Assembly (NCBI RefSeq): GCF_026571515.1
Contig: NW_026851951.1
Location: forward strand, 62,001-116,421
Length of the DNA: 54,421 bases
Source of the DNA: Ruditapes philippinarum
Lineage: Eukaryota
Reading direction: 5' to 3'
The notes under the pieces are model-generated. The model worked only from the letters and a program-made list of their open reading frames with translations, was not told where the DNA came from and did no database searches. Numbering within the stretch: position 1 is the first letter of the stretch; each line of letters opens with the position of its first letter. The position numbers and the translations under genes were made by a program. Shown here piece after piece: positions 11,801-50,800 of the stretch.

Positions 11801-13057
11801 TTGCTCAATGGAACAAGTAACAAACTTAAGCCGGCTATCTATTCAAAATACATGGACATAGGTACTTCAAACTTTATTTGCACGAGTACTTCCAGCAACA
11901 ACCGCTTTCCGATCAAAAGGTCAAGGTCACTTAGATGTGTACGTATTAACGATATACAACTGACCATGGCACATTTCAAGAGAACTTTCACACGCACCTT
12001 GATGAGTACTATCCGCCATACCGATTTCATGTTATGAATGTATAACATTTTATTCAATTTATAAGTTTTCCATCCAGGACTGAGGGCTCTGCTCCTCGGA
12101 CAGCTAATTAATTTTATTTTGGTTCGTCATTGCTTAATCCTAAATACGGTTGCATTTCTAAGTGCGTATCTACGTAATATTCGTGGTCTTTTGCGTTTCT
12201 TTTGTTTGTTGTGAGAAAGGGGTTATGCTGTTAAGATGAAATGTAAATGCGACATGCTCAAAACATGCACCGTTCAGACTTTCTGCTATTTTGTTTATAT
12301 GTAATCAGATTGTGCGCATATCTTTGGAGGGGAGCGAGGCCCTTTAGCTGGTCAATATTCATCGCTGTTAGCACATGGAATTTCGAAAATTCATTTCAGT
12401 TCATCAAAAGTATATCTTAATGTATTTCCTCAATCAAGATTAATGGCTTATAATTTCATTTAAAAATACATTGTATACATACTATCAACATTTTCAAACT
12501 GTATAACAGCCGAATGATTTTCTTCGTCAAACTGAATGTTGCTGATTTTTCCTCCACCACATTTTCTTGAACTTTTGAAAAAGAGAGTAAGGTATTGTTT
12601 ATCTATTCCAGCAGGAATTCCTGCAACCTTTATCGTCCTCCTTGCTTGTTCATCGTCTGAAATACAAATTAAATGATCTAATCAGACAAAAAAGGCAAAT
12701 GAATAACATATCATGCCTCAGAAATTATTAAATCTAAGCATATCATGCCTCAGAAATTAATAAATCTAAGCATATCATGCCTCAGAAATTAGTAAATCTA
12801 AGCAAATCATGCCTCAGAAATTAATAAATCTAAGCACATCATGCCTTAGAAATTTCAAACTCCTTACCGTTCTCCTTCGGCCCAGGGTTAGGTTCTATGC
12901 CGGAAAGCAACAAAAGTAGTCCTATGAAAAGTACAGTACCGATAACTTTAATCCCGCCACTTAAGTTCACAGGACAAACAATCGTCACAACATCGACTCC
13001 CGATGAAAATCTGAAAGTTCCTATTCTACCACGGTACGTTTCGATATCGATACCCAT
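4040..13057 (-). CDS. GVIN1: Very large inducible GTPase (GVIN1/VLIG/URGCP-like), copy 1. Spliced CDS join(13057-12868, 12656-12483, 11235-10969, 10686-10549, 9939-9871, 8871-4040), 5670 nt, 1889 aa: 2A-like leader + 2 RRM-like domains + VLIG GTPase
   Basis: All five introns are GT-AG with phase-1 junctions and the joined frame is open. The same six exons occur in copy 2, with exons 1-5 of identical length. The terminal exon has G1 GVQSSGKS, GRCTRG, G3 DSEG and the family C-terminal CPFCxEPC...H motif. Confidence 0.88.
9871..9939 (-). CDS. GVIN copy 1 coding exon 5 (linker, AQASIPETIHKRTERKVDMDDIL)
   Basis: aatag| acceptor, |gtaagt donor, 69 nt, open in phase 1. Equivalent exon at 32330-32398. 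Confidence 0.75.
10549..10686 (-). CDS. GVIN copy 1 coding exon 4 (end of RRM2 + linker)
   Basis: tttcag|TT acceptor, G|gtatag donor, 138 nt. VAQRVVNKSTHTLKQNTLKV completes the RRM-like fold. Confidence 0.8.
10969..11235 (-). CDS. GVIN copy 1 coding exon 3 (end of RRM1 + most of RRM2, PARP14/PARP10/NMI-type)
   Basis: cttccag|CT acceptor, G|gtaagc donor, 267 nt. TIEVTGF...LELYFEDEESSGGDTI...ALVTFES matches the LxLYFE...SGG...A.VTF pattern of this RRM subfamily. Confidence 0.87.
12483..12656 (-). CDS. GVIN copy 1 coding exon 2 (RRM1; absent from the ORF track)
   Basis: tttcag|AC acceptor, A|gtatgt donor, 174 nt. Translates DDEQARRTIKVAGIPAGIDKQYLTLFFKSSRKCGGGKISNIQFDEENHSAVIQFENVD. The 3 differences from copy 2 are all synonymous. 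Confidence 0.87.
12708..12856. repeat. 32-bp tandem repeat, ~5 units, in the intron after the 2A exon
   Basis: tcatgcct recurs at 12711, 12743, 12775, 12807 and 12839. Confidence 0.95.
12868..13057 (-). CDS. GVIN copy 1 coding exon 1: hydrophobic leader ending in 2A-like motif SGIEPNPG|P
   Basis: ATG at 13057 sits just after a pyrimidine-rich acceptor. Donor AACG|gtaagg at 12868 is in phase with exon 2. 5 synonymous and 1 non-synonymous differences from copy 2. Confidence 0.82.
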
Positions 13058-13261
13058 ACTGAAAGGGGAAACGAGATGTTAAAATGTATAGCATGTAAAT
13101 TCACATATTCAGGATATTGCGATATCGTTTTTCGCAGCTATTGCATTATAAAACATAAATATGCTAGGTTTTTAAATGAAAATATGAGTTCCGTTATGAG
13201 CAAAACGATTCTGTTATGAGTACTGAGTATAAAGGTAAATTATTGATTATCATTACTGTAT

Positions 13262-13476
13262 GTCGTACGGTTAGCTCAATAGGTAGAACGTTGACCTGTG
13301 AATCTGGCGACCCCGGTTCGATTCCAGGACGGTGCAGGTCACTTCCGTTATGATTGATCATGAAATCCTGTCTACGGTCATTCGCATTTTACCTCTGATC
13401 TGACATGTACAGAAGTTTCAGTTCCTTGCGAAAGTTGAGGCAACTAGTAGTGGTAAACAATGCGGTCTGGTAAATT
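13262..13476 (+). mobile_element. tRNA-derived SINE with a Meta-type central domain (MetaSINE-like)
   Basis: tRNA-like head (ttagctcaataggtagaacg...ggttcgattcc) followed by gattgatcatgaaatc...tctacggtcattc...tcagtt...gcgaaag, which resembles the Meta domain as recalled. Confidence 0.72.
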
Positions 13477-16400
13477 CTTTTTGTATAAATATATTGCGCT
13501 ACATTTAAAATGGTTTTACTATCTACCAGCAAGGAATGAGGCCCGACGACATTGACAAATGGGCCCAAGGTTTCCAGACCTATTTTCATTTAGTAAATGT
13601 TTTTTACCTGGGCGAGTCGGTTCGTCATTCAATCTTTGTGTGTTTTGGTTGCAAGATTCACGAGATTGTACAGAAGTTTCGATAAATGATTTAATATTCT
13701 ACATATATATGTTTTAGAACGTTAAATATTTTTCGCAGCCGAGGTATATGGTATTTCCATTGCAATATCAAACCAAGTAGATGTACATGTATAAAGCTGA
13801 CATTTCATCAGTTGTATTTGTATTAAATTTAGAAATGTATTCATATTGTGACTTTTAAATCTCGAAACATGTTATCCTGAATAAAATACTTATCTTGTAT
13901 AGCATAATTGAGTTTAAAATTTGGAACGTTTTAGTTAAAAGGGACTATTATTTCGGTTCCGATATAAGTGATCAATTCTTTAAAGATACACTAGTTTTTT
14001 ATACATATATTTTATTCCTTTATAAATTTCTCGTTTTCGGTATACTTAAATTGATTTTTTCTAAATATATTGATTATATTATGAAAATATTGATCCTACT
14101 TTTTTATAACCTTGTGTTTTTTTCAATTTGATATTTAATAGGTTTGTATTCACTGTATGTGTTTTGAAGTATGAAACTTTACAATACGAAAAGCGTGGAT
14201 CAATTGGAACACGAGGACAATTTTCACGTATTAACCATGTGACTTTAGATGTAATAAAAAAGGATGCAATCTTATCTTTTTTATGTATTTGTATGACAGA
14301 AAATGAAGTCGAATTTGATAAAATAATGATCAAATAATATGTGTGACAAAATATATTAAAGACTGTCTCTTATTAACCAATTATAACCAAACTCGAAATA
14401 TCGTCAACTGTTGTACTTTCGTTTTCTAAAAACAAACAAACTTTAAGGTAGACGAAAAATGAAACAAAATTAGTATATGAAAACTACAAAAAAGGTCTGT
14501 TCAATTTTCATAATAATTGCAAATACGTCGTCACAATTCCGTCGTACTTACTTCTTGGCCACTGGGTAATTTTTTTTTATATAGATATCGAGATCTTTAC
14601 TATATATTTTGAAATCCTAAGCGTAAATCAGAGCAAATTACGAACCTCTGAAAGTTAACTAGTCTCGAACAAAATTTTGATCATTGATATTACACTAAAA
14701 GAGTACCGTCAATTACACCACACTACATTTGATTTACGGCGATACTCGTATTGCCCATTTTACTCAAGGTCGAGTAATCATCAAACTTACCTTACTATAG
14801 GTGATGATTATTCGATATGAATAAGATATGACGTTTCAGTTTAAGTCAATAATAATCCATTAAAGATATTTATAATTTAGCCGATAGTTTAAGTTTAATA
14901 ATGAATTTGATATTGAACCAGTTCGATTTTAAGTTAAAGCTGTTACTTTTATTAAGATTTGATCACCTAGATCTTTTACCTACCCTTTTATAAAGAATAA
15001 AAGAAATTCTAAAAAAGAAAAAATCTATTATTAAAAAAAAAAATATTAAAAAAAAATATATTTTGAAATTATCTTAAAATTATTTAAAAAAAAAAAAGGT
15101 TTTTATATGAAGAATAAAGTAATTTTGGTGTGGCACACAAGAAACAACAAATCCAAAATCGAAAACCGCTAAAGCCCATGGCGACTAGAAGCAATTATCG
15201 ATAATAACATAGATAAACAAGTCCATGGCAACCTTAAACGTGCGTAAAAACTAAAACCCAGTTAGCATTTAGTGCAAGAAAACCAACCGTTGAATCGTAA
15301 TAATTAAATATATCTTTAATGTAGTACAATTCAGAAATGAATAATGCAAAACGTTTCAACGACATTAGGTTACAAATAGTTGTCCAAATATCCTAAAGTT
15401 TCTGGTCTATTTCCCAAAATAACTTTCGACAAAATTACGGGCATGCATTTTTAAAAAGACATGTAATAATAACTTTACGAGGTCGATCATCGATCGCGCT
15501 AAATGTTTATATACTAACATGAAACTGAACAAGTGAAAAACATCAAATTTAAGAGAATTAAAACGTACCTGTTTGTTACTATCTCAAAACGCCAACTGAT
15601 TTTTACCCCGTCTTGAACGTCGATTGAGGTGATATCGATTTTAACAGAACAAGGAAGTTCTTCATTACTACAGGTTATATATCAATTTTAATAGTTTCAA
15701 AAGATAAATTATTAACTATTTTTGCGTTAAAATGATCAATAAGACAACCACGCGCCGTTGTTGTAAGTTTTCTTTTCTTTTTCTTTTTCTTTGTTTTCAT
15801 GGGTTATACATGGCACAATGTACAAAAAATCTAACCATAATACTGCAATTACGGCCCACGGTAGTTTTATCATCAATACTTGCGAATGACAGTGCACTCG
15901 TGCACTATAACGTCACAATCAATGGCCTTTAAAAACGAAATACAGATATCGAAAATTTAAACGTATACTTTTATGCCAGAAAAGCACTTATGTACCCTTT
16001 TTTCGTGCATTAATATCTACGTAAGTCCTCGGACTTATCAAATCCCTCACCGTATTTGTGCAAATATGGACTGTATACTCGGCGCAGGCACCGCCATAAC
16101 AGCCACAGAACATGCATAATGACGAGAACTATTCTGAATACGAGCACTATATAATATGTATAAGCAATATTGCAATTTGTGTTTATCACACCTTTGTTTT
16201 GAACTCAGTCGTTGCTCTTTAAATGACATTTAAATGATCTAAGAATAAATATTTTGACAATTTTGCTGCTAAAAACGTTTCATGAGACATTTCGTAAGCA
16301 GTCGAATTTATTTTCTTTATAGATAACAATGGACAATTCTTCTGAAAATATATCAATATAATAAATAACTATATACGGCTCGAATATAACTTCTTGCGAA

Positions 16401-16517
16401 CGTCACGTACTCAAACACTGTCTTCAATTTATAACATTTCAAGAATTTTTGAGGTAGGCTGATAACTTAAAAAATGTTTCTTTTCCGTGGGTTACGCCCA
16501 GTGATTAAAATACAAAA

Positions 16518-26620: not shown

Positions 26621-29600
26621 TTATAATGAGTAAATTCTTCTTAGGTTTTCCAAAGCTTCCTTTTGTGTAATTTCATCCCAGGAGTCCGGTATGTCAGATA
26701 TATCATATTTATAGTGAATTGCTAACAGGTATTTATATTTGGCCACAAACCATAGCCAAAATTTTGAGCATTCTTGTATATTAGCATTTGGCTCAATATC
26801 CCAGTCTGGAATATGCTCCCTATAATTTCTATACAAGTGCCATTGTTTGCCACAACGTTTCTTTTCTTCTTTATTGCATCTGAAGCCAAACAAATCACAA
26901 TGGTGCTCTAGATCTGATTGGACATTGAAATTGCAAGATGACAGTGCAGCTTTATTTATATAGTCCTCTCTTGCACCTAAACAGGACGATACTCTGTGTT
27001 GCAAACTAAAATGATTTGTTCCTTCATGTATGAAAGCTTTCGCACATGGCTCCCCGCAAAATGGACATTGCTCTGGGCAACCCCACACTTGTTGAAATAA
27101 GGCTTTTACCATGCTCTCCGGACCATTGAACTTAATAATTCTCTCGACTTCTTCTATCATCAACAGTTTTTCTACAATTTCTTCAGAGGAAGCATTGATG
27201 TTACCAGAAAGCAATCCGCTAAAGTTGTTCATATCTTCTATCTGACCAAACCATTTTGTTACATTTGAGAACTCTGATGTTCCAATTGGACACATAGAAC
27301 AATTTTGCACGAATGATTTTGTCCATTCTTCTGATGATGGGCTCTCATGACGAAATTTCTCATAACATTTATCAATACTTGCGTGGATGTCATTATAGAA
27401 TTCATTGACGACTTGGTTAACTATTTTAGATAAATTCGTCATGTTGGAATTAAATAGAAAGGTTTTCGCTTTTTTCTTCACCCAATCTTTCACAAGCTTT
27501 CTAGGACTTTTTATGTATTCTGTAAAAGAGTCAAAATCATCAGCAACTGTCAACTCTTCAAGAACTTCAATAATCAAATGATATTTCAATTGTGGCAAAG
27601 TTTGTTTTAACGTAACTTTAACAGCATATTGAATCCTGTCTTGTATTTTGCTCAACAAAATATTTTCTACAATAACCGTGATTTGTTTAGCAGCAGTTTC
27701 CTCAGCTTTACGGTCTCTTACAAATGCTATGAACTGTTCTTTTACTTGAACTTTGTAGTTAGAAATTCTTGCAAGTATACCCCTACTTTTGTGACATTCA
27801 GTGTTATGCGCATCAAAACGTGTGACACAAAAATCAGTCACGTGAATAAACAATTTGACAAGTCCTGTTATTTTCAACGAAATGTCATTCTCTTTGTTCT
27901 GTAACAGCTGAATTTTTTTGTATATCTTGTACAATATATGTTTCACTTCTCGATATGTTAGTTCATTCATGTCTCTTAAAAATGTATCCAATAATATTTC
28001 TATCTGACGTAATGTTATATTTACTTCATCTTGCACACGTGACATTTTCATATCGTTGTCTTGTCTGAAAGAATCTGATGAAAAGCTGATATCTTCCAAC
28101 ATTATGCGGCTAAGGTCGAACGATCCCGTCAAGGTATTGATGATATAAAAGTTGTTGTTACTCTGCTGTTCAGTCTTTTCTAGTGGATTCAAACTTTTCC
28201 GTTTTACTAACTCCGCCTTCAAAATAAGTTGCTCTGTACTGAGAATATCGAAAAGGCATCGTTCAAAATTGTCTGCAAGTGACTTTGAAACATCGACTAT
28301 TTCACCAAAATCTAGAATCTCCCTGCTTATTGAGTGCCAAGTTTGTTCAAATTTATTCTCGATTTCCTCCATATTGAGACATTCGCCTTTAATACTTTTT
28401 GCTACCTGTAGAGATCGTTCGTACATTGTAGCTTCGTGTCCTGAACTGTTTTCTATGATTTTCAGTTCGACACGCGTTCTATCTTGCAATCTTATCGTTT
28501 CAGTCCTAATTCTACCCTCTAATTCTATATGTAAAGACTCAATACGTTTTTTTGCAAAATCCTCCCACTGTAGTATTATATCTTTATATTCACTGTTATC
28601 AAAGTATTCATTTACTTCGTCTACTGCAAGAGACATACTATCAGCCATATTTTTACGCATCTGTTTAACAAGTCTATCAGCAGTATCCGACAATTGTCGT
28701 TGATAAAAACATTTAGAAAAAAATTTTGAGACAAAATATTGTTCTTTTCAAATTTTTTTTCAAATTTTTATCAAAAAATTTTTTTAATGTTTTTCCATTA
28801 AATAGCTTTTTTTCAAGCTATTTTTTAAAAATAAATACAAAATCCTCGTTAAAAAAACCTTTCCATAAATTTATATGAATGCAGCATCACCGAGAGATTT
28901 GGGGAAACCCTTATTTAAAACTTTCTGTAAAAGTGCCTTTTTGTCGAAAAAGCGTCATGTAGTTCATTTACTCTCGCCCAAAGGGGGGTTGCCTTGCCAA
29001 TAATCGGTAGTTTCCACACATTTCTTCGTGTCAAATCTATGACTTGATGAAAAACTTTATTTTTGCGATACCCCTTTTTTTTCCTGCATTTTTGCGGGAC
29101 AGTCCCGAGTCTCTTCAAAGCATTTAAACCTGTCCTCAAAATTTCTCGAGCAGCTGTATCAATTACGTTTTGGTGTACCAAGAAAAATATTTTTCCGATA
29201 TCCAGTTGCTTATTTGCAAGTTTCAATTTAAGAAACGCGTGTACAACTACTTGTACAATGTCCCGAATTTCATTGGTATTTTCACCATTACATTTAGCAA
29301 TGTTATATCACCTAATCCTGCTATCACCGTTGATAACTCGTTGTCGTGGTTATGTGTCGTAGAAGTACGTTCCGTAGATCGTAGACCTTCTGAATCTATA
29401 ACTGTCACATAACTGAAAGGAAGACTGTTGTTTGGTGTAATAGGCATGATTTGCATATGTATACCTCTAGTGCATCGCCCAGATTTCACCGGAAACAAAG
29501 ATCCAAACAGGGAATTCAGTAATGTTGACTTACCAGAACTTTGAACCCCAAGAACAGACAGTGTTAAACACTTTTTTGAGTGAATATTTTCCGACACTTG

Positions 29601-31447
29601 CTCTAAAACCGCTTGAACCCATTCCACCAAAAAATGGGAAAAAAAAAATTGTCCCGTCAATTATCTCGAAGATTTGCCCTGACTCTATTAAGGATGCCAT
29701 AAATGTATAATTTTTAACTGCATGGAATTTGGTACATTGTGGATCTGCTTTCGTTACAATCACAGACTCATATATGTGTCCTAACTCTCTAAACATATGT
29801 TCTATTCCTAAGTTTGCGTTTCTATTGATTCTTGTGATTTTGGCGATCTCTTCTTTAAGTGTTTTATGTCTGTCTTTAGTAAGATTGCAGTTTGCTTTCA
29901 ATGCAACCCAAGTTTTTGTCTATGTAATTATTTTGAGTACTAAATAAAGGAATTTGTTTTTTTTCCTTTCTGTGTCGATCAACAATATGACATCCATTTT
30001 ACTAAATATTGTACCATCATTGGTTTGTCTTTGATATTGTCCAATGACTGAAGAAATAACTTCATGGGACTCGAAATACTCTTAAGCTGTTTTTCCCTTA
30101 TTTGTTTGATTTTTGCTGTGGTAGTGTGAGTTTCTTGTACGGTTTTCAATCTATGTAAACTTCTTATACTGGAACCAAGTTGTTTTGAGTAAATGAAGTG
30201 TACCGGTGTTATGTAACTTTTCAACTGAACTTTGCTTCCAATATCAGACATAGATTGAAATACTTGGGTGGCTATTACCTTGGCTTTTGCACAATCGGTT
30301 CTGGTCTCGTCACTTGCATGAGATTGACATTCATTTACACGATCATCTAGAGATTTCACTGCGGCGATTTTGAGTCGAGTAGATATCAGTTGTCGAAGCT
30401 GTTTTGAAAAATCTTTAGAATTTATTTGAGTATGTGCTTTATATGTACTTACAATTGTAAGAGTTTTTGTAGGTGTTAGCTTCTCAGTAAACTGTTTAAC
30501 AGTTGATGGTTCCGTCTGGTTAGCTATGACAATGATAACGGTTGTGAAATTGGTAATCAGTTTACAGAGTTCTTGATCTTGTTTTATAATGGACGACTCA
30601 TCCAGTAAAAGAACAAGAATATCAGATATATTGGAAACCAATGAAATGACCCCTGTAGTGAAATCTTCTTCAATCCTCCCCCTCAAATTAAAAAATGCAA
30701 TTGCATCTTCAAATTTTTTTTCTTTTAAACCACCAAAAGGTAGAATGAACATTTCTACGGTTCCGTTACTGCAACGCTTTGGTAACATACCAAGAGGGCA
30801 ATTCATATTGAAAAATGTATCTTGAATATCGTCCGAAAGTAAATCATTCATTAATTTAGACTTTGAATAATTTGGTCTACCAAAATTTGCAAAAGTTACT
30901 GTTTTTAAAGGGAGCTCTAGAATCTCAAATTCCCTTGTTTCTGTTTCAGATGTCTGTGATATATTGTAACTTTCTACAACTAAAGAACGTAAGGGCCATA
31001 TTATAAATTCCCAATCATTTAACGATTTGTCATACTCTATAAAAGGAAAAGCTATTTTACACAAATACAATTTTTGGAACAATACTTGTTTAAGCATGGG
31101 GTCGCAGCATTGTAGTGTTATTAGAAATATATCTAAAGGAGAAATTCCATCACTTTCGTCGCTTGTGTCGTCCATAGAGAAATTTTCAAAGAATTGGACA
31201 ATAATTTCATGCACCTGTTCTGCTCTTTCTGTATGATCATTGACTACGCCAGAATGATCTCTTGCTTCACTCTGAACTCCTAAAATACGACGCAGTAGAA
31301 TCCACGGCAATTCTTCCTTTGTATAATTATGTTTAACATCAGCTTCAACATCTATCGTCATAACTTCCGTAATTGTAATTTTTTCTGGGAATTTGTCGGT
31401 CAAACCAGTAAGTTGTAAAATCTTAGCACTGTTGACTTTTGCTATGC
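26621..31447 (-). CDS. GVIN1: GVIN copy 2 terminal exon (VLIG GTPase body), with many small indels in the middle
   Basis: Acceptor ttttatag|GC at 31447. The N-terminal 474 aa and C-terminal 690 aa are open and closely similar to copy 1. P-loop GVQSSGKS is retained. Confidence 0.82.
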
Positions 31448-34400
31448 CTATAAAATAAAAAATATTGTATGAAAGATCTCCATCTATTTAGTAGAATACT
31501 GTTTAACTAGTTTTTCGAAATATCATCAGTAACCATGCAAAAAAGGAATGTTAATGAAAAAGAGACAATGCAATACAATACTAAATGATTGGAAATTGAT
31601 AATGTGGTTGTTACGTTCTTAAGTGGTAGAGAATTATATAAACCTTAAACATAATTATCGTCTTTCGCTTGCTGATTTAAGCATGAATCGTATTTGCAAA
31701 AAAAATCTCCCTGAAATTATCATGACTGGTGTATCAGGAAAAAATCATTGTATGTACTGACACATTCGAATTGGGGTACGCGCTTTATGTAGCCACTACA
31801 CCCATTTACTCGTTGTTTAACTTATGAAATAACGTTTCATAACTATACCTTTTATTTCATTGTCAGTAGGAAACCTTTTTTCAACAATTTCCGACTGTTC
31901 GCACGGCTCCGGCACCTCAACTGAATAACATAAACCACAAAAATCGAATTTTTCGAAGTAACATATTTAAGAGAGCAAATGATTATACAAGTAATAGCCA
32001 ATGATTGACGAAAATAACCAGCACATCGTCGATTATGCTCTAGACGATTTGTATAAACAAACCTAAGCAATATGGCTAAATCAGTACGATATCCGACTTA
32101 ATTGCATTCATAATATGGTAAAGTGCTTAAGAAAAGAAAAGAAAATCAGGTCTGCAAATTCATACCAAATAATCTACACTCTCCTGCAATGGTAATGTCA
32201 TAATAAAACAAGGTTAAAAACTGCATCTTCAGGTTGAGATTTTTTCTCAGGTCCTTGAGTAAACACGCGATTCATACTAATCTACTTTAATTAAAAAATA
32301 AAAAGTATTTTGGTCTCAGTGTAACTCACCAAGTATATCATCCATGTCTACCTTCCTTCCCGTTCGTGTGTAGATAGTTTCGGTGATTGATTCTTTGGCT
32401 ATCATTAAAAAGGTTAACTATATCATCTTTATTTATACAGAAGTAGACACACCAACCTTTATTCATATCATTGTTAAATCATATTGCATAAAATAAAGAA
32501 GATTTATGGCACTTGTATATTAATATATAGAGAAGGTTAAACAGGTGAATAACTTCCTTTTGTTAAATGTTTTAATAAAATGGTTTCAATGATACAGGTG
32601 TAGTGCTTTTTTATCTTGTATGTCCTTATATTGTGAAACGTCATGATACATGACATTTGCACAACCCAAAACATAATCATCCACATTAGATTAAAAGCGA
32701 TATAGATTATATTATGTCTTTTTATGAATATTAATTATGTTAAGAACATGTTTACGTGCAAAAAGATCACTGATTTGAGAAAAGTGTTCTTGGAAAAATC
32801 GTTTGTACGAGAGGTGTTCCAAAAATAATACCATTTGCCTTGTTTTCCTACACTTAAAGTAATTTCATCATTTTAAATGTCTCTGGCCCTCAAAATACTA
32901 CCCATCTACCTGAACACACCATTTGAGTACCTTAATCTAAATTTGAAAGCAGATTTCATACTCTTTAATTGGGACACTCATTAGGTACTGATAAACAGCA
33001 AACCCAATGGCATTTCTCGACTTGTATCTCTTTCCAGACAATTGGAATTTGAGTTTTGGAAACAAGAAATTGTGACAAGGGGCCAAGTCTGGTGAATATA
33101 GCTGATGCGGAAAGACAGTAATTTTTTTTTGATGCCAGCCACAAGCCTAGCCTTATGAGCGGGGGCATTATCGTGCTAAAGCCGGAGGTGCTCGATTCCT
33201 GTGCTTGGGCGGCGAAGTTTTTAGCAGGTCTTCAGTTTTCAGAACAATATTTTTGTAGAGCTTTGCTGTTACCGTTTTGCCTTTTGGTACCCGATTTCGC
33301 ATTACCGGTCCCTTATTATCAAAGAAATCACATACAAAACTTTCTTAACAGTGCTTTGGTGCTTGGCAATACTTGGACGTTTTGCATTTTAGTGGCCAAA
33401 TTCTATCTGAACATTTCCAATTTGGTTCAAAATAGTAAAATAGATAAAAACAGAATCCCTAAAGAAAGCCCAACACGGCAAAATTGAAAATGTTGCAGGC
33501 TCGGTTTGATTGAGCCTGTTCATGGACGGTACTGGAAAGTGCAAGTTACCGTCCACACCCCCTAGCACCGGCTTAAGCAGAATTTAAACCCATGCCTAAT
33601 CACCAGTAACGAAGTTGTGGAAAGCCTTTTTGTTATATTTGGGATAAATTTTGAGAAGCGTTTTTGCATTTGCAACACGGGTTCCCTTTTGTTCGTCTGT
33701 TAGCAAATGGGGTCTACATCTTGCATTTATTTTCCGAAGTTGAAGATTTTTTTTAAATACCATGGACTCGTGCTTAAGACAAGTTCGTCAACCGTGCTAA
33801 ATTTCTCACAGTGTATCGGGCATCTTTGTTTAGCATATTCCTGATTTTTTCTATGTTGATTTTCGTCGTTATTGTTGCAGGACGACCTAGGCGAGTAGCA
33901 TCTTTGACTTGCTACTGATCGGTTTTAAATTAAGCAACCCACCTACAAATAGATCTGTGAGACATTTCACCTACCTTATAAATGTCGCACACCTCAGGGT
34001 GAATATCTACAGGCTTTATGCCAAGTAAAGTCCGACCTTTTATATAAGCCCTAATTTCAAGCACATCTTTAGCTCTTCTACCAGCCATTTCATGTACAGT
34101 ATAGTGAAATGAATACGCTATAAAGCAATTTATCAAGGTCAGTGAAATTGTGAACGAGATTTTCACCTGTGTAATGCTTCTGTGATTATTCTATCGGTCC
34201 AAAGTGGTTTATAATACATAGCACACGATATTGACGAGATAATGCACAAATAACATTATTTTTGGAACACCCCTCTACTGTTGGGGACTTTATGTGTTTT
34301 AGTTAAGTGATAACTATAACGTAATAATTTAAGTTTATTTTAAATGTTATTTTAAAACATTACGCTTGCTAGTAAAATTTTCCAGAGTTCGTTTAAAAAG

Positions 34401-37002
34401 TATATCTTTTTTGACAGCAATTCATGGCCAAGTTTTGCATATACATATATATAGATCTATGCTGCACAATTTTAGAAGGAAGTATACCTGATGTAATTTC
34501 CATTGAAAGAGTAGACGAATCGGTATTATTGTCATGTTCCGGTGGGTTGTCTCTCCTATTTGGTACCACTATCAACGTGTTTTGCTTTAATGTATGTGTG
34601 CTTTTATTTACCACTCGTTGAGCAACTGAAAAACATAAAAAGAATTTTTAAAAAGAATTAAAAAAAAATATCATTTGTAACAATATAATTTTGCAGGTGT
34701 GTTAATTTGAAATAGTATGTGTAACCTTTAAACAGTCCATAAAAATTGGTAATGTTACTAACAGTTATAACGCCTTGCTTGGCTTAGCTATGTAAGATAA
34801 AAAAAACAATCTAGTTCATGTACGCCAGCAACATTGCAAGATTAATACGCGGAAAGAAAGTCGTTTTAATATTATCGAGTATATTGCAGCAACTTAGAAC
34901 ATTACTGTCTAGTCAGTGTTTACCTTTGATCGATTCAAATGTAACAAGGGCTTTTCCATCGTCATCTATTGTTATATTAGCTATAGTGTCACCGCCTGAA
35001 CTTTCCTCATCTTCAAAGTATAATTCGAGAAGTTCTGCCATTTGCGAATCACCCGTCTGGAAGCCAGTAACCTCAATTGTCGGAGAAGAGCATAAAGAAA
35101 AGCTGAAACTCGGTTCTGATTCAGAGCTATCTATTTCTAGGACAGTTCCTGCTATTTCAATGGGCCTTCTTTGTAACACTGATTGAACAGCTGGAAGATC
35201 GAATTCAGCATTATTTGTACAAGATTTTTTTACGAAGGGATTTTTAAAAACGATATTAAAAAATGAATTCATTGAAAAGAACATACTTGAATGTTACTGT
35301 AAATAATTCTACCGTCGCATCTGAGCAGTTCAAGACAAGTTCTCTTGATTGTTTAAATGTAGTGCAAATAAACATAACCGTTCTACTTTCGCTATATGGT
35401 TGAAATATTTTGAAATGTTATCTAACAATTTGAGGTTAGAAATATACAGACAACCCGGTCAATAAAAATGTTATCCCCATGGATGATTTATTGATACTCA
35501 TGTATATAACAAGATCAAAGTAGCTGATCGTAAAAATTTCAACTGATAAAGATAACATGCATTGTAGCCGTTTTTGTCCTACTTTCTATTTATATTGCTC
35601 CAATAAAAAATCTCAACTGATAAACATATTATGCTTTGTAACCGTTTTTGTCTATAATTTATATCTTTATTGTAACCAATAAAATCTTTACGTATACGTT
35701 GTTAAATTTTAAAATTCATGTAACCTTCTTTTTTACCGTGTTCTACCTGCCAAATTTATTTACTGGTACAATGATCAAAGTCAAAGTTCTAGCTCAATGG
35801 GTAAGCTAGTTATCTATTCAAAATGCATGGACATAGGAACTTCAAACTTTATTTGCACGAGTACTTTAATGACTACTTCCAACAATAACCCTTTTCCGGT
35901 CAAAAGGTCAAGTTCACTAAGATGTGTACGTATTAATGACATATAACTGACCATGGCGCATTACAAGAGAACTTTCACAAGCACCTTGATGAGTCCTACC
36001 CGCCATACCGATTTCATTTAATGAATGTATAACATTTTATTCAATTTATAAGTTTTCCATCCAGGACTGAGGGCTCTGCTCCTCGGACAGCTCATTAATT
36101 TTAATTTAGTTCCCAATTGGTTAATCCTAAATATGGTTGCATTACTAAGTGCGTATCTACGTTATATTCGTGGTTGTTTGCGTTTCTTTTGTTTGTTGTA
36201 CAATGTGAAAGGTGTTATGCTGTTAAGATGAAATGTAAATGCGACATGCTCAAAACATGCACCGTTCAGACTTTCTGCTATTTTGTTTCTATGTAATCAG
36301 ATTGTGCGCATATCTTGGGAGGGCAACGAGGCCGTTTAGCTGGTTAATATTCACCGCTGTTAGCACATGGGATTTCAAAAAGTTATTTCAGTTCATCAAA
36401 AATATATCTTAATGTATTTCCTCAATCAAGATTTATGGCTTATAATTTCATTTAAACATACATTGTATGCATACATACTATCAACATTTTCAAACTGTAT
36501 AACAGCCGAATGATTTTCTTCGTCAAACTGAATGTTGCTGATTTTTCCTCCACCACATTTCCTTGAACTTTTGAAAAACAGAGTAAGGTATTGTTTATCT
36601 ATTCCAGCAGGAATTCCTGCAACCTTTATCGTTCTCCTTGCTTGTTCATCGTCTGAAATACAAATTTATTATTAAATTTAAGCATATCATGCCTCAGAAA
36701 TTAATAAATCTAAGCATATCATGCCTCAGAAATTATTAAATCTAAGCTTATCATGCCTCAGAAATTAATAAATCTAAGCTTATCATGCCTCAGAAATTTC
36801 AAAATTCCTTACCGTTCTCCTTCGGCCCAGGGTTAGGTTCTATGCCGGAAAGCAACAAAAGTAGTCCTATGAAAAGTACAGTACCGATAACTTTAATTCC
36901 GCCACTTAAATTCACAAGACAAACGATTGTTACAACATCGACTCCCGATGAAAATCTGAAAGTTCCTATTCTACCACGGTACGTTTCGATATCGATACCC
37001 AT
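26621..37002 (-). CDS. GVIN1: GVIN/VLIG copy 2. join(37002-36813, 36652-36479, 35190-34924, 34625-34488, 32398-32330, 31447-26621); frameshifted at ~28700-29990 (probable assembly error, alternatively a pseudogene)
   Basis: Exon-for-exon paralog of copy 1 with intact splice sites. ORFs 29979-31403, 29530-29901, 29247-29660, 28915-29226 and 26621-28693 are collinear pieces of the terminal exon. Confidence 0.8.
32808..34275 (-). mobile_element. Decayed mariner (Tc1/mariner) transposon in intron 4 of GVIN copy 2
   Basis: TA|CGAGAGGTGTTCCAAAAATAAT ... ATTATTTTTGGAACACCCCTC|TA. Transposase remnants include the HTH start IRAYIKGR...ICRWV, VTGD*AWV/YYFEP, HDNAPAH and YSPDLAP. The empty site is present in copy 1 at ~10335. 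Confidence 0.92.
33437..33586 (+). mobile_element. ~150-bp double-hairpin element nested in the mariner transposase
   Basis: Nearly identical to 16519-16663; it splits the transposase WV|YYFEP codons. Confidence 0.85.
34924..35190 (-). CDS. GVIN copy 2 coding exon 3 (RRM-like)
   Basis: 267 nt with the same splice positions as 10969-11235. Confidence 0.85.
36479..36652 (-). CDS. GVIN copy 2 coding exon 2 (RRM1)
   Basis: 174 nt; protein identical to copy 1 exon 2. Confidence 0.85.
36671..36800. repeat. 32-bp tandem repeat, ~4 units, in the equivalent intron of copy 2
   Basis: tcatgcct recurs at 36687, 36719, 36751 and 36783. Confidence 0.95.
36813..37002 (-). CDS. GVIN copy 2 coding exon 1 (2A-like leader)
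   Basis: 190 nt, MGIDIETYRGRIGTF...LLLLLSGIEPNPGPKEN, donor G|gtaagg. Confidence 0.82.
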
Positions 37003-37177
37003 TGTGCTGAAAGAGGAAACGAGATGTTAAAATGTATAGCATGTAAATTCACATATTCAGGATATTGCCATATCATTCCGCAGCTATTGCATAATAAATA
37101 AATATACTGTATTAGGTTTTTAATGAAAATATGAGTTCCGTTATGGACAAAACGATTCAGTATGAAGGTGAATTATT

Positions 37178-45486: not shown

Positions 45487-46587
45487 GTGAACGAAGAACT
45501 CATGTACCCTTCATCATATTTTAGGCATTCGCGGACTACAATGGAATATAGAAGTGTGTTGTCTTTGAAGATGCAGCATAGACGTTCATATTTAGAATTT
45601 AGAACTCCAGATTTCAACAAAAAACGTAATATTATTGAAACAATTAGTCCATCTGATGGACCTCAAGGTGACCATGCCAATTCACCGTACCCCACCCGCA
45701 GAAAAGAATATACATCTCCTGAGGTACCATCCCATGTTAACTCTGAACATCAAGACAAAGATATTAATCTTGCAGAACTAGTTAAATCTGCTATTTGTAG
45801 CACAGATGTTATGGAAGCAATTTCAGATGCATTGGTACCAACACTTACTGTTGTTTTTGAGTCGATGCTTCGACCCATAAATGAAAAAGTTGATGCCCAA
45901 AACAAACATATTTCAGAGATGACAACTCAATTAAATGATCAAAATCAGCTTGTTTCAAAAGTCCAAAACGAAAATCAAAAGCTTGCAATAGATCTACAAA
46001 ATGCAGAAGAGCGAATCGAATCTCTTGAACGAAGCCTTGACGACATAGAACAGTACGGGAGAAGAACATCACTTCGTTTCCATCGTGTCAATATTAACTC
46101 ACCCGAAATGTATGAGACGACAGAGGCTAATATTGATAAAACAAATGGTGTAAATAACAAAAAGCAACCAGAGAATCTTAAAATTAATACTGATGAGATA
46201 GTTGTGAATATTTGCAACAACATAATGAAAGTTGACCCGCCTTTAAGTGTAAACGATATTGAACGCTCCCACACAATTGGTCCTGTGAAAGATGGTTATT
46301 CACAAATTCTTTGCAAATTCAAAGCATGGAAAACTAAACATCATGTGTACATGAACAAATCAAACATTAAAAAACATAATGGAACCAAAGTCAATGTTTT
46401 CATTACAGAGGATCTAACAAGAAAGAGGCAGTTCCTCGTTCAGCAGCTTGAATTTGCCAGAAAATCCAGCAAAATCGATAGTTTTTGGACCAGCGACGGT
46501 CGTATTCTTTATAAATCTACTCCTACAAGCAAGGTTAAATCCATAAGAGACGTGAATGACATCGATCACTTATTACCTGACAATTAA
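45487..46587 (+). CDS. LINE ORF1p (coiled coil + L1/CR1-type RRM-CTD); the true start is probably a downstream ATG
   Basis: Heptad-rich region followed by IEQYGRRTSLRF, DIERSHTIG, ILCKF, FITEDLT and FWTSDGRI motifs typical of invertebrate ORF1p. Confidence 0.85.
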   Translation: MNEELMYPSSYFRHSRTTMEYRSVLSLKMQHRRSYLEFRTPDFNKKRNIIETISPSDGPQGDHANSPYPTRRKEYTSPEVPSHVNSEHQDKDINLAELVKSAICSTDVMEAISDALVPTLTVVFESMLRPINEKVDAQNKHISEMTTQLNDQNQLVSKVQNENQKLAIDLQNAEERIESLERSLDDIEQYGRRTSLRFHRVNINSPEMYETTEANIDKTNGVNNKKQPENLKINTDEIVVNICNNIMKVDPPLSVNDIERSHTIGPVKDGYSQILCKFKAWKTKHHVYMNKSNIKKHNGTKVNVFITEDLTRKRQFLVQQLEFARKSSKIDSFWTSDGRILYKSTPTSKVKSIRDVNDIDHLLPDN

Positions 46588-47802: not shown

Positions 47803-50800
47803 ATAGGTAATAGTTTAAATGAATGGCGGGTGGCGATAGGATTGTTTTATAACGGTTTGCAGGGCTATATGAAAATGTGTAAATTATATATGTATTCACC
47901 AAGAAAACTAGTTTTAGGCAATTTTAAGCAAATAGCTTTACTATACGTTTATATGATTGTATTTACCTGTTTGTACAGATCAGTATGTGATGAGAAATCA
48001 TTCAGTTTTGGAAACTTTCAGGGTTGTGATTCCAATTTTGACTTAAACTGTCTAATTTTTATAATGGGCACTATCATGTTACAATTACTGATAATTAGTG
48101 GAGACGTTGAAAGTAATCCCGGTCCTAACAGTGAATCGCAACTTAATTGTTTATCAATATACAGTCAAAATATTAGAGGCTTGCGTAACAAAATTTCACA
48201 CATACTTTGTTTTACGGAAACTCATCTTGATAGTTCAGTATCCGATAATAGTTTAAAAATAGACAATTATTCTTTTTATAGAAAAGATGTCTCGTGTCAT
48301 TCTGGGGGAATTCTGATATATGTGTCCGATGAAGTAATCTCTAAGCATAAATATGAACTTGAATTTTATCTAAATGATTGTCTTTGGGTCGAACTTAGAC
48401 ACAAAAATGAAAATATCTTACTTTGTACTGTTTATAGGCAGCCGAGTGGTCCTACTTCTTTTTGGTTAGAACTAAGTAATAGCGTTGAAAAAGCTTTTGA
48501 AATCAGTGAAAGAATAATTATTGTAGGTGACATTAATGAAGACCAGCTTAATAGAAATAATCACAAATTTAGAGACATTCTTCTGATTAATGACCTGAAA
48601 AATGAAATTAATGAACCAACTCGTGTTACAGTAAACTCTTCAACTCTTCTAGATCCGATCGCAGTTTCCTCTTCTATAAGCATATATAATTCGGGTATTT
48701 CATGTACACCAAACAACATAAGTGACCACTACGGGACTTACATTTTTATCAAATTCGAAAAAGAGACTTTTAAATCATACAAACGTCGAGTTTGGAATTA
48801 CAAAAGAGCGGATTTCGACAAACTTAATAACCTAATTCTTAATCATGATTTGGTTTTTCTTTTGTCACGTTCTGTAGATGATGCTTGCGAAAATTTTACA
48901 TCAGGACTTACTGAATTAGTAAAACAATGCATACCAACTAATTATGTAACTATTCGTCAATATGATCGACCTTGGTACGACTCGCTATTAGAACTAAATC
49001 TGTTAATGACTGGAGCCGATTCAAGCATTTACGCAATAAAGTTAATAATTTAAAAAAACACGCTAAAGAATTATTTTATAGTAACCTTGAATTTTCATTA
49101 GAGGAAGCCAAATCAGATAACCCGAAATTTTATTGGAAAACCGTTAAAATGTTAATTAAAAATAATAACGATCAATGTCATTGTAATAACATTCCAGTTT
49201 TATTTTCTGAAGTTAATGACGCTGAAATATGCTATTGCTCTAATAAGGAAAAAGCTGACTGTTTAAATGAATATTTTTATCTCAGTTCCTACCGTTGATG
49301 CATCAAATACCCAATTACCGCCTTTCTTTCCTAGAACGGAGAGCATATTACCCACTTTCACTATCCAATCACAAGAGGTAAAAGATATTCTTGCAAATTT
49401 AATTTTAAATAAAGCAACAGGGCCGGACAAAATTAGCCATCGAATTTTAAAAGAAACGCAAAACAGTATTTGTTATCCTCTTAGTGTACTTTTTAATAGA
49501 ACACTCAATGAAGGCTCATATCCCAGTTCCTGGAAACTTGCAAATGTTATGCCCCTTTTTAAAAAGGGTGACCCCCATATTCCCTCCAATTATAGACCTA
49601 TATCACTAATAAGCTGCAGTGGGAAAGTCATGGAAAGAATTGTATTTAGGAAATATATATAACCATTTGCATTGTAATAAATTGATATATCCGTTACAAT
49701 CAGGGTTTCTTCCGGGCCATTCGACAGTTTATCAACTAATCGACATGTATCATCAAATTTGCGAATCATTTGACAAAAAGCAATCTACTTGCATTGTATT
49801 TTGTGATATATCAAAAGCGTTCGATAGGGTGTGGCATTCGGGTTTACTTTTCAAACTGAAACAATATGGTATAAATAATGAACTTCTTACATGGATTGAA
49901 AATTATTTATCTAATCGTAAACAATCTGTTTTTGTTGGTCCTGAATGTTCGGAAGTGCTAAATATACCAGCGGGTGTCCCACAGGGCTCGGCCCTTGGTC
50001 CCCTTTTATTTCTTATATATGTGAACGATATTGCTGAAAATCTACTAAGCGTAACAAGACTTTTTGCTGACGATAGCTCTTTATCCGTTTCCTCTAACGA
50101 TCTAAATTACATTGAAAGTACTCTTAACTCCGACCTTGAAAAAATAAATAAATGGTCTAAACAATGGTTGATTAATTTTAACCCAAATAAAACAGAAGTT
50201 ATGTTCTTCTCTCAAAATCATAGAATCAAACTCTCTCTAGATTTCGTGGATAATCACAAACATTTAGGATTAACTCTTTTTTGCGACTTGAAATGGCACG
50301 ATCATATTAATAATATTTCAGCTTCTGCGTCAAAAGTATTAGGCTCTATGCGTGCTTTAAAATTCCAACTTAAAAGATCTACTTTAAACCAGATTTATAT
50401 ATCTTATATGCGTCCGATACTTGAGTATGCCTCAATTGTTTGGGATGGATGTGCTGCATATGAAAAACAATCACTTGAGCAATTACAATACGAAGCCGCT
50501 AGAATTATTACGGGTGCAACTCGGTCAGTATCGATAGATTTTTTGGTCAAAGAAGTTGGCTGGGTCTCACTCTCTGATAGGCGAAAAATTCAAAAACTTG
50601 TAATTGTTTACAAAGCTAAAAACGGTTTACTACCGGACTATTTATCCTCTTTGTTTCCGCCTACTGTGTCAGAAATTTCTTCTTATACTTTGCGAAATAA
50701 TAACGACTATGTTACTATTGCTAGACGCACTCAGTTATATAATGCATCGTTTTTACCATCCTCGTTAGAATTATGGAATAACCTCGACCCAAATATACGA

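What the first reader, a model, noticed from the sequence alone, without database searches (positions are those of the whole stretch)
12868..48126. The host 2A leader looks like a domesticated LINE ORF2 leader, and a LINE with the same architecture is in the window
Seen: the GVIN leader is MGIDIETYRGRIGTF + hydrophobic stretch + LLLSGIEPNPGP. The LINE ORF2 leader is (I)GNSLNEWRVAIGLF + hydrophobic stretch + LIISGDVESNPGP. Both begin with G-x4-(W/Y)R-x2-IG-x-F and end in a 2A motif. The host exon's splice donor falls only 3 codons after NPGP, roughly where the LINE endonuclease would begin. Inference: the exon arose by exonisation of a CR1/L2-type ORF2 5' module. The neighbouring LINE is too diverged (longer leader, no evident nucleotide identity) to be the direct donor. 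The shared N-terminal motif may be an unrecognised functional partner of 2A.
Basis: partly seen in the sequence, partly recalled or inferred. Interest (0 to 1): 0.85.

Follow-up and report, generated by a model that had tools for sequence, protein, structure and literature searches.

The report
LINE-type StopGo leader on clam GTPases
A 60-residue leader ending in a ribosome-skipping "2A" signal heads dozens of clam immune GTPase genes, and it is recognisably the same module that starts the proteins of jumping genes (LINEs), which links a host immune-gene exon to mobile DNA.

Summary
Two tandem GVIN/URGCP GTPase genes on the minus strand each carry a 190-nt exon. It encodes Met-Gly, a conserved N-motif, a hydrophobic helix and G-I-E-P-N-P-G-P, with the splice donor 3 codons plus 1 nt later. 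Spliced transcript contigs join this exon in frame to the RRM exons and the giant GTPase exon.

The similarity to LINE leaders extends well beyond NPGP. A 17-residue profile made only from LINE ORF1 leaders, without helix or 2A columns, scores the host exons 26.7-26.8 bits against a background of 10 bits or less. In this genome, 41 of 47 G(V/I)ExNPGP cores have the N-motif 130-190 nt upstream. A leader profile finds 1302 protein clusters worldwide.

- The nearest LINE relatives carry the module on ORF1, not ORF2.
- The window's own LINE is only a marginal match (7 bits).
- The CR1/L2 label is untested.
- The host exon is old. It is shared by Ruditapes, Mercenaria, Mactra and Mya, and it also heads NACHT, nSTAND3 and death-domain genes.
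- Host and LINE leaders split on one branch (SH-aLRT 96), so the direction of transfer is not shown.

StopGo activity and the role of the N-motif are inferred, not tested. Other first readers of this scan noted LINE 2A leaders elsewhere in this genome.

The parts
12868..13058 (-). Leader exon of GVIN gene copy 1. Acceptor AG at 13060-13059, ATG at 13057-13055, 60-codon leader ending NPGP at 12878, then K-E-N plus 1 nt, donor GT at 12867-12866 (phase 1).
   Evidence: Sequence. Spliced contigs join 12868 to 12656. Best genome-wide match of the leader search.
13013..13057 (-). N-motif M-G-I-D-I-E-T-Y-R-G-R-I-G-T-F (consensus M-G-[VI]-D-I-x-x-[YW]-R-x-R-I-G-x-F).
   Evidence: A LINE-only N-part profile scores it 26.7 bits. 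dN/dS 0.13 among paralogues. Position frequencies.
12878..12966 (-). Hydrophobic helix (about residues 32-51) followed by the StopGo core G-I-E-P-N-P-G-P (12878-12901).
   Evidence: AlphaFold2 helix 32-51, pLDDT 75-90. The core fits (D/G/C/N)(V/I)ExNPGP, for which the p12=G variant is reported as functional (PMC12846837). dN/dS 0.19.
12483..12656 (-). Next exon, 174 nt, phase 1-1, PARP14-type RRM.
   Evidence: Joints 12868>12656 and 12483/4>11235 in contigs X1 and X2. Homologous proteins hit PF23085.
9264..11235 (-). Further small exons 10969-11235, 10549-10686, 9871-9939 and 9264-9335.
   Evidence: GT..AG joints on the minus strand in spliced contigs.
4040..8871 (-). Giant last exon: URGCP domain plus URGCP-like GTPase domain (GVIN / very large inducible GTPase).
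   Evidence: Pfam PF25683 at 1.5e-94 and PF25496 at 6.5e-48. Joint 9264>8871.
15571..15678 (-). Upstream exon of copy 1, the counterpart of the acidic exon in the RefSeq model of copy 2.
   Evidence: tblastn of P0011. Duplicated block 15300-16058 matches 40350-41074.
36813..37006 (-). Leader exon of GVIN gene copy 2 (ATG at 37002, NPGP ends at 36823).
   Evidence: Sequence. The RefSeq-derived protein P0011 maps here.
26621..31448 (-). Large exon of copy 2. The GTPase domain is broken into pieces.
   Evidence: Pfam PF25496 on 29979-31403 only. PF25683 matches in three fragments with a stop. The P0011 model ends at 877 aa.
45487..46587 (+). ORF1 of the neighbouring LINE (coiled coil, no 2A leader).
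   Evidence: ORF list and Pfam coiled-coil hits. Clusters with LINE ORF1 references.
47803..48126 (+). ORF2 leader of the neighbouring LINE: variant N-motif (47803-47847), 108 codons long, ending G-D-V-E-S-N-P-G-P.
   Evidence: The family has many 92-98% identical copies. All copies read ATA at the first codon of the motif. Profile score only 7 bits.
48127..51205 (+). LINE ORF2 body: endonuclease and reverse transcriptase, frame broken in this copy.
   Evidence: PF03372 and PF00078. PDB matches to R2 and L1 ORF2p at 1e-9 and 1e-7.

Best explanation
The 190-nt exon is a genuine, expressed, spliced coding exon. It gives the clam very-large-GTPase (GVIN/URGCP) genes a leader of about 60 residues with three parts: (1) Met-Gly plus the motif [VI]-D-I-x-x-[YW]-R-x-R-I-G-x-F, (2) a variable and often basic linker followed by a hydrophobic helix of about 20 residues, and (3) the StopGo core G(V/I)ExNPGP.

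The whole module is homologous to the N-terminal leader of non-LTR retrotransposon proteins. These are mostly ORF1p of elements whose ORF2 is nearest to L1, and in a variant form also ORF2p, as in the LINE in the window.

Most likely the module was taken once from the 5' end of a LINE in an ancestor of venerid, mactrid and myid clams. It became a phase-1 start exon and then spread by gene duplication and exon shuffling to GVIN paralogues (about 33 exons in this genome) and to NACHT, nSTAND3 and death-domain genes.

Inferred mechanism: at Gly-Pro the ribosome releases the 59-residue leader as a separate small peptide with a tail-anchor-like shape, and carries on to make a leaderless cytosolic GTPase that begins with Pro. 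Chains that fail to skip keep a signal-anchor and are tethered to a membrane or degraded. This would set the dose or location of the protein.

Shown: the sequence, splicing, homology, selection and distribution. Inferred: the skipping activity, the membrane behaviour, the direction of transfer and any role of the N-motif.
For: Exon and expression:
- Acceptor and donor are conserved in about 30 paralogous exons.
- Spliced contigs join leader, RRM exons and GTPase exon with GT..AG introns.
- GVIN GTPase domains lie downstream on the same strand for most leader exons.

Homology outside NPGP:
- The single host leader finds LINE ORF1 starts over residues 1-61, 39-44% identity, genome-wide E 0.009-0.2.
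- A host N-part profile hits only LINE ORF1 starts (14-20 bits).
- A LINE-only 17-residue profile scores the host exons 26.7-26.8 bits against a background of 10 bits or less.
- Profile-profile comparison of the N-parts gives P=1.3e-19, against scores of 16 or less for shuffled columns.

Coupling of the N-motif and 2A:
- 41 of 47 G-type cores and 24 of 100 listed D-type cores have an N-motif hit 130-335 nt upstream.
- Among ORF1 homologues, 24 have both features, 55 have neither and none has the N-motif alone.

Breadth:
- 1302 protein clusters at E<=0.001.
- Host carriers are GVIN, NACHT-HEPN, nSTAND3 and death-domain proteins in Mercenaria, Mya, Mactra and Ruditapes.

Single host group: SH-aLRT 96.

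Selection: dN/dS is 0.13 for the N-motif, 0.51 for the linker and 0.19 for the helix plus 2A.

Plausible activity: the p12=G core is reported as functional (PMC12846837). Leu-rich N-terminal 2A-like leaders on sea-urchin NLRs both skip and target proteins (PMC4981915).
Against: - The tree is unrooted and has only 60 columns. Host leaders do not nest inside LINE leaders, so LINE-to-host is preferred only because LINE leaders are more diverse and sit on several kinds of TE protein.
- No recoding assay, proteomics or localisation exists for this leader.
- The RefSeq model of copy 2 starts 85 residues upstream, and one RNA contig end agrees with that exon junction. In some isoforms the leader may therefore be internal.
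- Many D-type LINE 2A families in this genome show no canonical N-motif (cross-reference), so the motif is not needed for 2A as such.
- The taxonomy of most LINE-type hits is unknown because the sources are unnamed.
Confidence: 0.6

Rival explanations
1. One reading: the exon arose by exonisation of the 5' module of ORF2 of a CR1/L2-type LINE, with the splice donor replacing the start of the endonuclease.
For: ORF2 leaders with a related motif followed directly by an endonuclease exist: the window LINE, P0058 and P0149. The host donor lies 3 codons after NPGP, and the LINE endonuclease match starts 14 residues after NPGP.
Against: - ORF2-type leaders form a variant subgroup with A, S or C instead of R at motif position 11. 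They are often longer (108 residues) and score only about 7-10 bits with the N-part profile, whereas ORF1 leaders and host exons score 26-31 bits.
- ORF1 leaders share the host's 59-61 residue length and its Met-Gly start.
- The LINE clade was not determined. The window RT is about equally distant from R2 and L1.
Confidence: 0.1
2. Reverse direction: a host leader exon, first evolved on an immune gene, was captured by a LINE and then spread among LINE families.
For: The host/LINE split is a single branch of an unrooted tree, so the root could lie on the host side. Host leaders are ancient, being shared by four clam genera.
Against: - LINE-type leaders are far more diverse (longer branches).
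- They occur on ORF1, on ORF2 and on PHD-, THAP-like and zinc-finger TE-type proteins.
- They occur in gastropod ORF1 in a variant form.
- 2A leaders on non-LTR elements are known from cnidarians to vertebrates (PMC3708506).
- Capture of a 5' host exon by a LINE is mechanistically rarer than exonisation of a TE.
Confidence: 0.15
3. Independent acquisition from a third source (for example an RNA virus polyprotein), or convergence driven by shared co-translational constraints on N-terminal 2A leaders.
For: 2A is typical of RNA viruses. Published opinion holds that a polyphyletic origin of short 2A sequences is likely (PMC4981915).
Against: - Fifteen ordered motif positions plus conserved spacing and a conserved Met-Gly start are shared. 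That is too much for convergence without a known constraint.
- An exact pattern for the N-motif plus NPGP found nothing in 2.9 million viral contigs (this is a weak negative, since that collection is mostly phages).
Confidence: 0.08
4. Chance resemblance outside the 2A motif, with no homology.
For: The window LINE alone matches only marginally (7 bits, E about 2). The motif was defined after seeing the data.
Against: The LINE-only profile scores the host exons 26.7-26.8 bits against a background of 10 bits or less. Genome-wide co-location of N-motif hits and 2A cores is 41/47 and 24/100, against about 2e-5 expected per core. There are 1302 clusters with the full module.
Confidence: 0.02

Closest known systems
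N-terminal '2A-like signal sequences' of sea-urchin NLR (NACHT) proteins (Roulston et al. 2016, PMC4981915)
   Same: A Leu-rich hydrophobic leader ending in a 2A core at the very N-terminus of expanded innate-immune genes. The proposed dual outcome is the same: skipped chains become cytosolic protein, unskipped chains carry a signal or anchor.
   Different: The sea-urchin leader is 26 residues long and has no N-motif. Here the leader is about 60 residues with a conserved Met-Gly...[YW]-R-x-R-I-G-x-F block. It sits on GVIN GTPases (also on NACHT, nSTAND3 and death-domain genes) in clams, is encoded by its own phase-1 exon, and is demonstrably homologous to LINE leaders.
2A-like sequences in the N-terminal region of non-LTR retrotransposon ORF2p and ORF1p (Odon et al. 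2013, PMC3708506; 2026 preprint 10.64898/2026.06.17.732966)
   Same: The position is the same, 40-80 residues from the N-terminus of ORF2p or before the coiled coil of ORF1p. The core motif is the same, and mollusc elements are included.
   Different: Those studies analysed roughly the 20-30 residues before the skipped bond. The conserved block at the extreme N-terminus and its coupling to 2A are not described in any paper I could search. No link to a host exon was made.
Viral 2A/StopGo peptides (FMDV F2A, T2A; core (D/G/C/N)(V/I)ExNPGP, PMC12846837)
   Same: The core octapeptide, including the common p12=G variant, and a helical upstream context.
   Different: Viral 2As are internal separators of polyproteins. 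Here the element is a start-of-protein leader that would release a small hydrophobic peptide.
GVIN / URGCP very large inducible GTPases
   Same: The downstream protein has the URGCP and URGCP-GTPase Pfam domains at full length.
   Different: Vertebrate GVINs are not known to have 2A leaders or PARP14-type RRM N-terminal exons. No searchable paper links GVIN with 2A.

Membership tests
2A / StopGo recoding peptide | C-terminal core (D/G/C/N)(V/I)ExNPGP | tested here: met
   G-I-E-P-N-P-G-P at 12878-12901 and 36823-36846. Motif definition from PMC12846837.
2A / StopGo recoding peptide | Suitable helical or hydrophobic context of about 20 residues upstream | tested here: met
   Leu-rich helix, residues 32-51, pLDDT 75-90. 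Conserved L-L at positions -13 and -12 in 53/53 host leaders.
2A / StopGo recoding peptide | Separated upstream and downstream products during translation | not testable with these tools
   Needs a reporter assay or proteomics.
Non-LTR retrotransposon N-terminal 2A leader (homology class) | Significant sequence similarity to LINE leaders outside the 2A core | tested here: met
   The LINE-only 17-residue profile gives 26.7-26.8 bits against a background of 10 bits or less.
Non-LTR retrotransposon N-terminal 2A leader (homology class) | Host leaders nest inside LINE leader diversity (which would show derivation from LINEs) | tested here: not met
   Host and LINE rows are two sides of one branch (SH-aLRT 96). 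The tree is unrooted.
CR1/L2 clade (for the LINE in the window) | RT phylogeny with clade reference sequences | not tested
   No clade reference set was available. The PDB comparison only shows the RT is about equally distant from R2 and L1.
Sea-urchin-type NLR 2A-like signal sequence | Short (about 26 aa) N-terminal hydrophobic leader ending in 2A on an immune gene | tested here: inconclusive
   The N-terminal position, the hydrophobic helix and the immune-gene context are met. The length and the extra N-motif differ. No sequence comparison with the sea-urchin leaders was run.
GVIN / URGCP GTPase (host gene) | URGCP domain plus URGCP-like GTPase domain above the Pfam cut-offs | tested here: met
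   PF25683 at 317 bits and PF25496 at 164 bits.
N-myristoylation signal | Gly2 plus a small or Ser/Thr residue at position 6 | tested here: not met
   Gly2 is nearly invariant, but position 6 is mostly Q, E or D. The criterion is from general knowledge (PROSITE PS00008).

The most novel reading that the evidence does not exclude
The Met-Gly...[YW]-R-x-R-I-G-x-F block is a functional partner of N-terminal 2A elements, not a passenger. It sits about 45-50 residues ahead of the skipped bond, so it would have just left the ribosomal tunnel when the ribosome reaches Gly-Pro. There it could act at the tunnel exit, for example by tuning skipping or by keeping SRP off the helix. Alternatively it could be the business end of the released 59-residue tail-anchored micropeptide. 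Either way, LINEs and clam immune genes would share a previously unrecognised co-translational device that was moved between them as one exon.
Probability: 0.3. Interest if true: 0.8.

Novelty: new variant of a known kind. Interest (0 to 1): 0.62.

Why it matters
N-terminal 2A leaders on immune genes and on LINEs are both known. Their relationship had been called unknowable because 2A is so short. The extra conserved block makes the leader long enough to test homology, and the test is positive. It shows that a retrotransposon-type translational recoding module and a start exon of expanded innate-immune genes (GVIN, NACHT, nSTAND3 and death-domain genes in clams) are the same thing. It also points to a strongly constrained 15-residue motif of unknown function that travels with 2A in more than a thousand protein clusters. 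This gives a concrete, cheap experiment for the 2A field and a new feature to annotate in mollusc immune genes.

Tried and rejected
- **More genomic DNA.** Later pattern searches gave coordinates only. I used coordinate co-location instead.
The genomic context and taxonomy of unnamed LINE-type hits could not be obtained.
- **The search for homologous proteins, leader region of L036 ORF1.** Only 2 hits.
- **The search for homologous proteins, 2A region of the window LINE alone.** No candidates. The planned test of choosing by 2A only and then looking for the N-motif was therefore done with DNA patterns instead.
- **Exact N-motif plus NPGP pattern in viral contigs.** 0 hits. This is a weak negative.
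- **The protein-atlas search.** No usable hit.
- **Host-only and LINE-only profiles against the window LINE leader.** Scores of -3.8 and 1.0 bits.
- **Myristoylation reading of Met-Gly.** Position 6 does not fit.
- **'MSSSFTSK' antisense to the LINE 5' end at about 45.5 kb.** I suspected it might be the first exon of copy 2. The real exon is at 41420-41563 and has no similarity to the LINE.
- **RNA run X23** laid no reads, which is no test.
- **Joined spliced protein.** Exons were handled one by one, and the RefSeq-derived protein P0011 returned by the tools was used for mapping.


Full report
**What is in the window**

Six-frame translation finds NPGP in three meaningful places: 12878-12889 and 36823-36834 on the minus strand, and 48115-48126 on the plus strand.

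The two minus-strand sites belong to near-identical small exons. Each has these features, in order:
- a polypyrimidine tract and AG acceptor, then ATG;
- M-G-I-D-I-E-T-Y-R-G-R-I-G-T-F;
- a variable stretch;
- a Leu-rich hydrophobic segment;
- S-G-I-E-P-N-P-G-P, then K-E-N plus one base;
- G|GTAAGG.

Downstream of copy 1 lies a 1581-codon open frame with the URGCP and URGCP-like GTPase domains (PF25496 at 6.5e-48, PF25683 at 1.5e-94). This is a GVIN-type very large GTPase. Copy 2 has the URGCP domain, but its GTPase domain is in pieces.

On the plus strand there is a non-LTR retrotransposon. It has a coiled-coil ORF1 (45487-46587) and an ORF2 frame that reads I-G-N-S-L-N-E-W-R-V-A-I-G-L-F, about 90 residues, then S-G-D-V-E-S-N-P-G-P. 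This is followed by an endonuclease (PF03372) and a reverse transcriptase (PF00078).

The only slip is that the spacing is G-x5-[WY]R, not G-x4.

**The exon is real, expressed and spliced**

Contigs of two public runs that behave as RNA assemblies join 12868 to 12656. The joints continue through 12483/4>11235, 10969>10686, 10549>9939, 9871>9335 and 9264>8871. All introns are GT..AG on the minus strand. The leader exon (phase 1) is therefore spliced in frame to a 174-nt phase 1-1 exon, to further small exons and to the giant GTPase exon.

A protein returned by the database search (P0011, named by its source as an up-regulator of cell proliferation-like protein of Ruditapes philippinarum, on a contig of 116421 bases) maps exon by exon onto copy 2. 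This identifies the genome as the Manila clam.

That model starts 85 residues upstream, in two acidic exons. One contig's loose end at 13057 agrees with that junction. Which ATG is used therefore remains open. However, the Met at the leader start is kept in all 29 paralogous exons that were captured whole; a thirtieth is cut off by the end of its contig.

Exons were treated one by one.

**The exon is a family-wide feature**

The 63-residue exon product has at least 53 matches in the 1.4-Gb genome. About 30 are short open frames with the same architecture: an acceptor 1-12 nt before the ATG, a 57-72 residue leader, and a donor G|GT 2-3 codons plus 1 nt after NPGP. For most of them a GVIN GTPase domain lies 5-40 kb downstream on the same strand of the same contig.

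Among paralogues, dN/dS is 0.13 for the first 16 codons, 0.51 for the middle and 0.19 for the helix plus 2A. Synonymous sites are near saturation in distant pairs. The N-motif is thus at least as constrained as the 2A part.

**Relation to LINEs**

The same search also gave weaker full-length matches (residues 1-61, 39-44% identity, genome-wide E 0.009-0.2) inside long open frames. Fetched, these are multi-copy elements in which a 59-61 residue leader starts ORF1, a coiled-coil protein. The leader reads M-G-V-T-I-D-I-W-R-G-R-I-G-C-F, or M-G-I-D-V-V-A-Y-R-I-R-I-G-L-F, or M-G-I-D-I-G-L-Y-R-I-R-I-G-L-F, followed by a basic stretch, a hydrophobic helix and G-G-(D)-[VI]-E-x-N-P-G-P. ORF1 is followed by an endonuclease/RT ORF2. 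That ORF2 is nearer to human L1 ORF2p (1e-35) than to R2.

Tests that exclude the helix and the 2A:
- A profile of the first ~30 residues of host exons hits, apart from the window's own two host exons, only these LINE ORF1 starts, aligned Met to Met at 14-20 bits. One further LINE-locus frame scores 12.6 bits, and everything else scores 8 bits or less.
- A 17-residue profile was built only from LINE ORF1 homologues that were themselves collected with a LINE ORF1 query. It contains no host sequence at either step. It scores the window's host exons 26.7-26.8 bits (E about 1e-6 in a 242,000-residue set that includes the whole window in six frames) and the other host exons 18-31 bits. Background is 10 bits or less.
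- Profile-profile comparison of the N-parts gives P=1.3e-19, while 30 column shuffles gave scores of 16 or less. This last test is partly circular, because both sets came from a search with a mixed profile.

**The window's own LINE is a weak witness**

Its leader scores 1.0 bits with the first LINE N-part profile, -3.8 bits with the host profile, and 7 bits (E about 2) with the second LINE profile.

It belongs to a variant subgroup of ORF2 leaders with A, S or C instead of R at motif position 11. Examples are P0058 (M-G-N-S-L-N-Q-Y-R-A-S-I-G-L-F, then an endonuclease) and P0149. The link to the host leader is transitive, through these and the ORF1 leaders.

All copies of this LINE family read ATA where relatives have ATG. 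Its RT is about equally distant from R2 and L1 in the PDB comparison. The CR1/L2 label could not be tested.

**Coupling of the N-motif and 2A, tested without circularity**

In the own genome, a DNA pattern for G-D-V-E-x-N-P-G-P has 129 matches, and a pattern for G-[VI]-E-x-N-P-G-P has 47. The reversed control patterns have none. An N-motif-only profile (17 positions) has at least 150 matches.

I cross-referenced the coordinates by hand:
- 41 of the 47 G-type cores have an N-motif hit 130-190 nt upstream on the same strand.
- 24 of the 100 listed D-type cores have one 130-335 nt upstream.
- About 2e-5 per core is expected by chance.

Among ORF1 homologues chosen mainly by their bodies, 24 have both features and 18 have only the 2A. 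Many of those 18 are truncated gene models or variant motifs, and a few have short 17-25 residue leaders. A further 55 have neither feature, and none has the N-motif alone.

So the motif occurs only with 2A, but 2A occurs without it. Several multi-copy D-type families here show no canonical motif.

**Breadth**

A profile of 15 leaders (alignment A1) finds 1302 protein clusters at E<=0.001 among 1.84 billion representatives. Nearly all of the best 150 match positions 1-60 at the protein's own N-terminus.

Proteins with the leader include:
- GVIN/URGCP GTPases with PARP14-type RRMs (Mercenaria, Mya, Ruditapes);
- a NACHT plus HEPN protein (Mactra);
- an nSTAND3 NTPase (Mercenaria);
- death-domain and tri-helical proteins (Mya);
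- LINE ORF1 and ORF2 proteins;
- PHD-, THAP-like and zinc-finger proteins from unnamed assemblies.

Leader length is narrowly distributed at 56-62 residues in most cases.

**Direction and age**

In a tree of labelled leaders, the 53 host rows and the 44 LINE rows are the two sides of a single branch (SH-aLRT 96; 83-84 when unlabelled rows are included).

This fits one transfer followed by spread among host gene families. But the tree is unrooted and has only 60 columns, so host leaders are not shown to nest within LINE leaders.

I prefer LINE-to-host because LINE-type leaders are much more diverse, sit on several kinds of TE protein, and belong to a class of elements in which N-terminal 2As are known from cnidarians to vertebrates (PMC3708506). 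That preference is an inference.

The host exon is old, shared by Venerida (including Mactridae) and Myida. No donor copy should be expected to survive, and the neighbouring LINE certainly is not the donor.

**Likely mechanism**

The core fits (D/G/C/N)(V/I)ExNPGP. The p12=G form is as common as D in RNA viruses and is reported as functional (PMC12846837).

AlphaFold2 on the small alignment gives a weak helix at residues 5-12, a disordered linker and a confident helix at 32-51 (mean pLDDT 66).

I infer the following. Skipping at Gly59-Pro60 releases a 59-residue peptide whose hydrophobic helix lies 8 residues from its C-terminus, which is a tail-anchor-like shape. The GTPase continues from Pro as a leaderless cytosolic protein. 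Unskipped chains carry a signal-anchor.

This parallels the dual targeting shown for the shorter leaders of sea-urchin NLRs (PMC4981915). It also parallels the abundance-lowering effect reported for Leu-rich eukaryotic 2A-like peptides (preprint 10.64898/2026.06.17.732966).

The role of the N-motif is unknown. Gly2 is nearly invariant, but position 6 does not fit a myristoylation signal. Its distance from the skipped bond would place it just outside the exit tunnel at the moment of skipping, which is the basis of the more novel reading.

**Novelty**

The papers I could search describe 2A-like leaders on LINE ORF2p and ORF1p, on NLRs, and on death-domain, ankyrin and RapGEF proteins. None mentions GVIN GTPases with 2A. 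None prints the N-motif. One states that speculation about the relationship of cellular, LINE and viral 2As is fruitless because they are so short.

The longer conserved leader removes that obstacle. I rate this as a new variant of a known kind.

Other first readers of this scan noted the exon, its constraint and the RRM exons on this window, and LINE 2A leaders elsewhere in this genome.

**Limits**

- No experiment on recoding exists for these sequences.

Noticed in passing
window 26621-31448 (-), especially 28963-29982: GVIN copy 2 is degraded. The GTPase domain matches in three fragments with a stop, and the RefSeq-derived model ends at 877 residues. Even so, its leader and RRM exons are 95-100% identical to the model and intact.
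   Followed up: partly
window 41420-41563, 40611-40718; 15571-15678 (-): The RefSeq-derived model of copy 2 begins 85 residues upstream of the leader Met, in two acidic (Asp-rich) exons. Copy 1 has a counterpart exon. One RNA contig end at 13057 agrees with this junction. It is not known whether translation starts there or at the leader ATG.
   Followed up: partly
window 13227-13425: Very high depth in transcript contigs (over 200), with many loose ends on both sides. This is probably a transcribed interspersed repeat just upstream of the leader exon.
   Followed up: no
window 47803-47805 and loci L044-L072: Every copy of the window's LINE family reads ATA (Ile) at the position where related ORF2 leaders have the initiator Met. 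How ORF2 translation starts in this family is therefore unclear.
   Followed up: partly
P0116, P0074, P0127, P0143 (database proteins, unnamed assemblies): The same leader precedes PHD-finger, THAP-like and other zinc-finger sequences. The module is therefore combined with many different downstream domains.
   Followed up: no
P0209, P0237 (Batillaria and relatives); P0252, P0256 (Dermacentor ticks): Gastropod ORF1 homologues carry a variant N-motif (F-R-A-x-C-G-x-F) before the 2A. Tick ORF1 homologues have the 2A after a long, different N-terminal region with no clear motif.
   Followed up: no
own genome: There are 129 exact G-D-V-E-x-N-P-G-P and 47 G-[VI]-E-x-N-P-G-P coding cores, against 0 for the reversed control patterns. 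The clam genome is unusually rich in StopGo motifs. About 33 of them lie in host-type exons.
   Followed up: partly
window 10920-10954: RNA reads of run X21 skip 33 bases here, with 2 other letters in between and TA..GT ends. This is probably an indel difference between alleles or paralogues rather than an intron.
   Followed up: no
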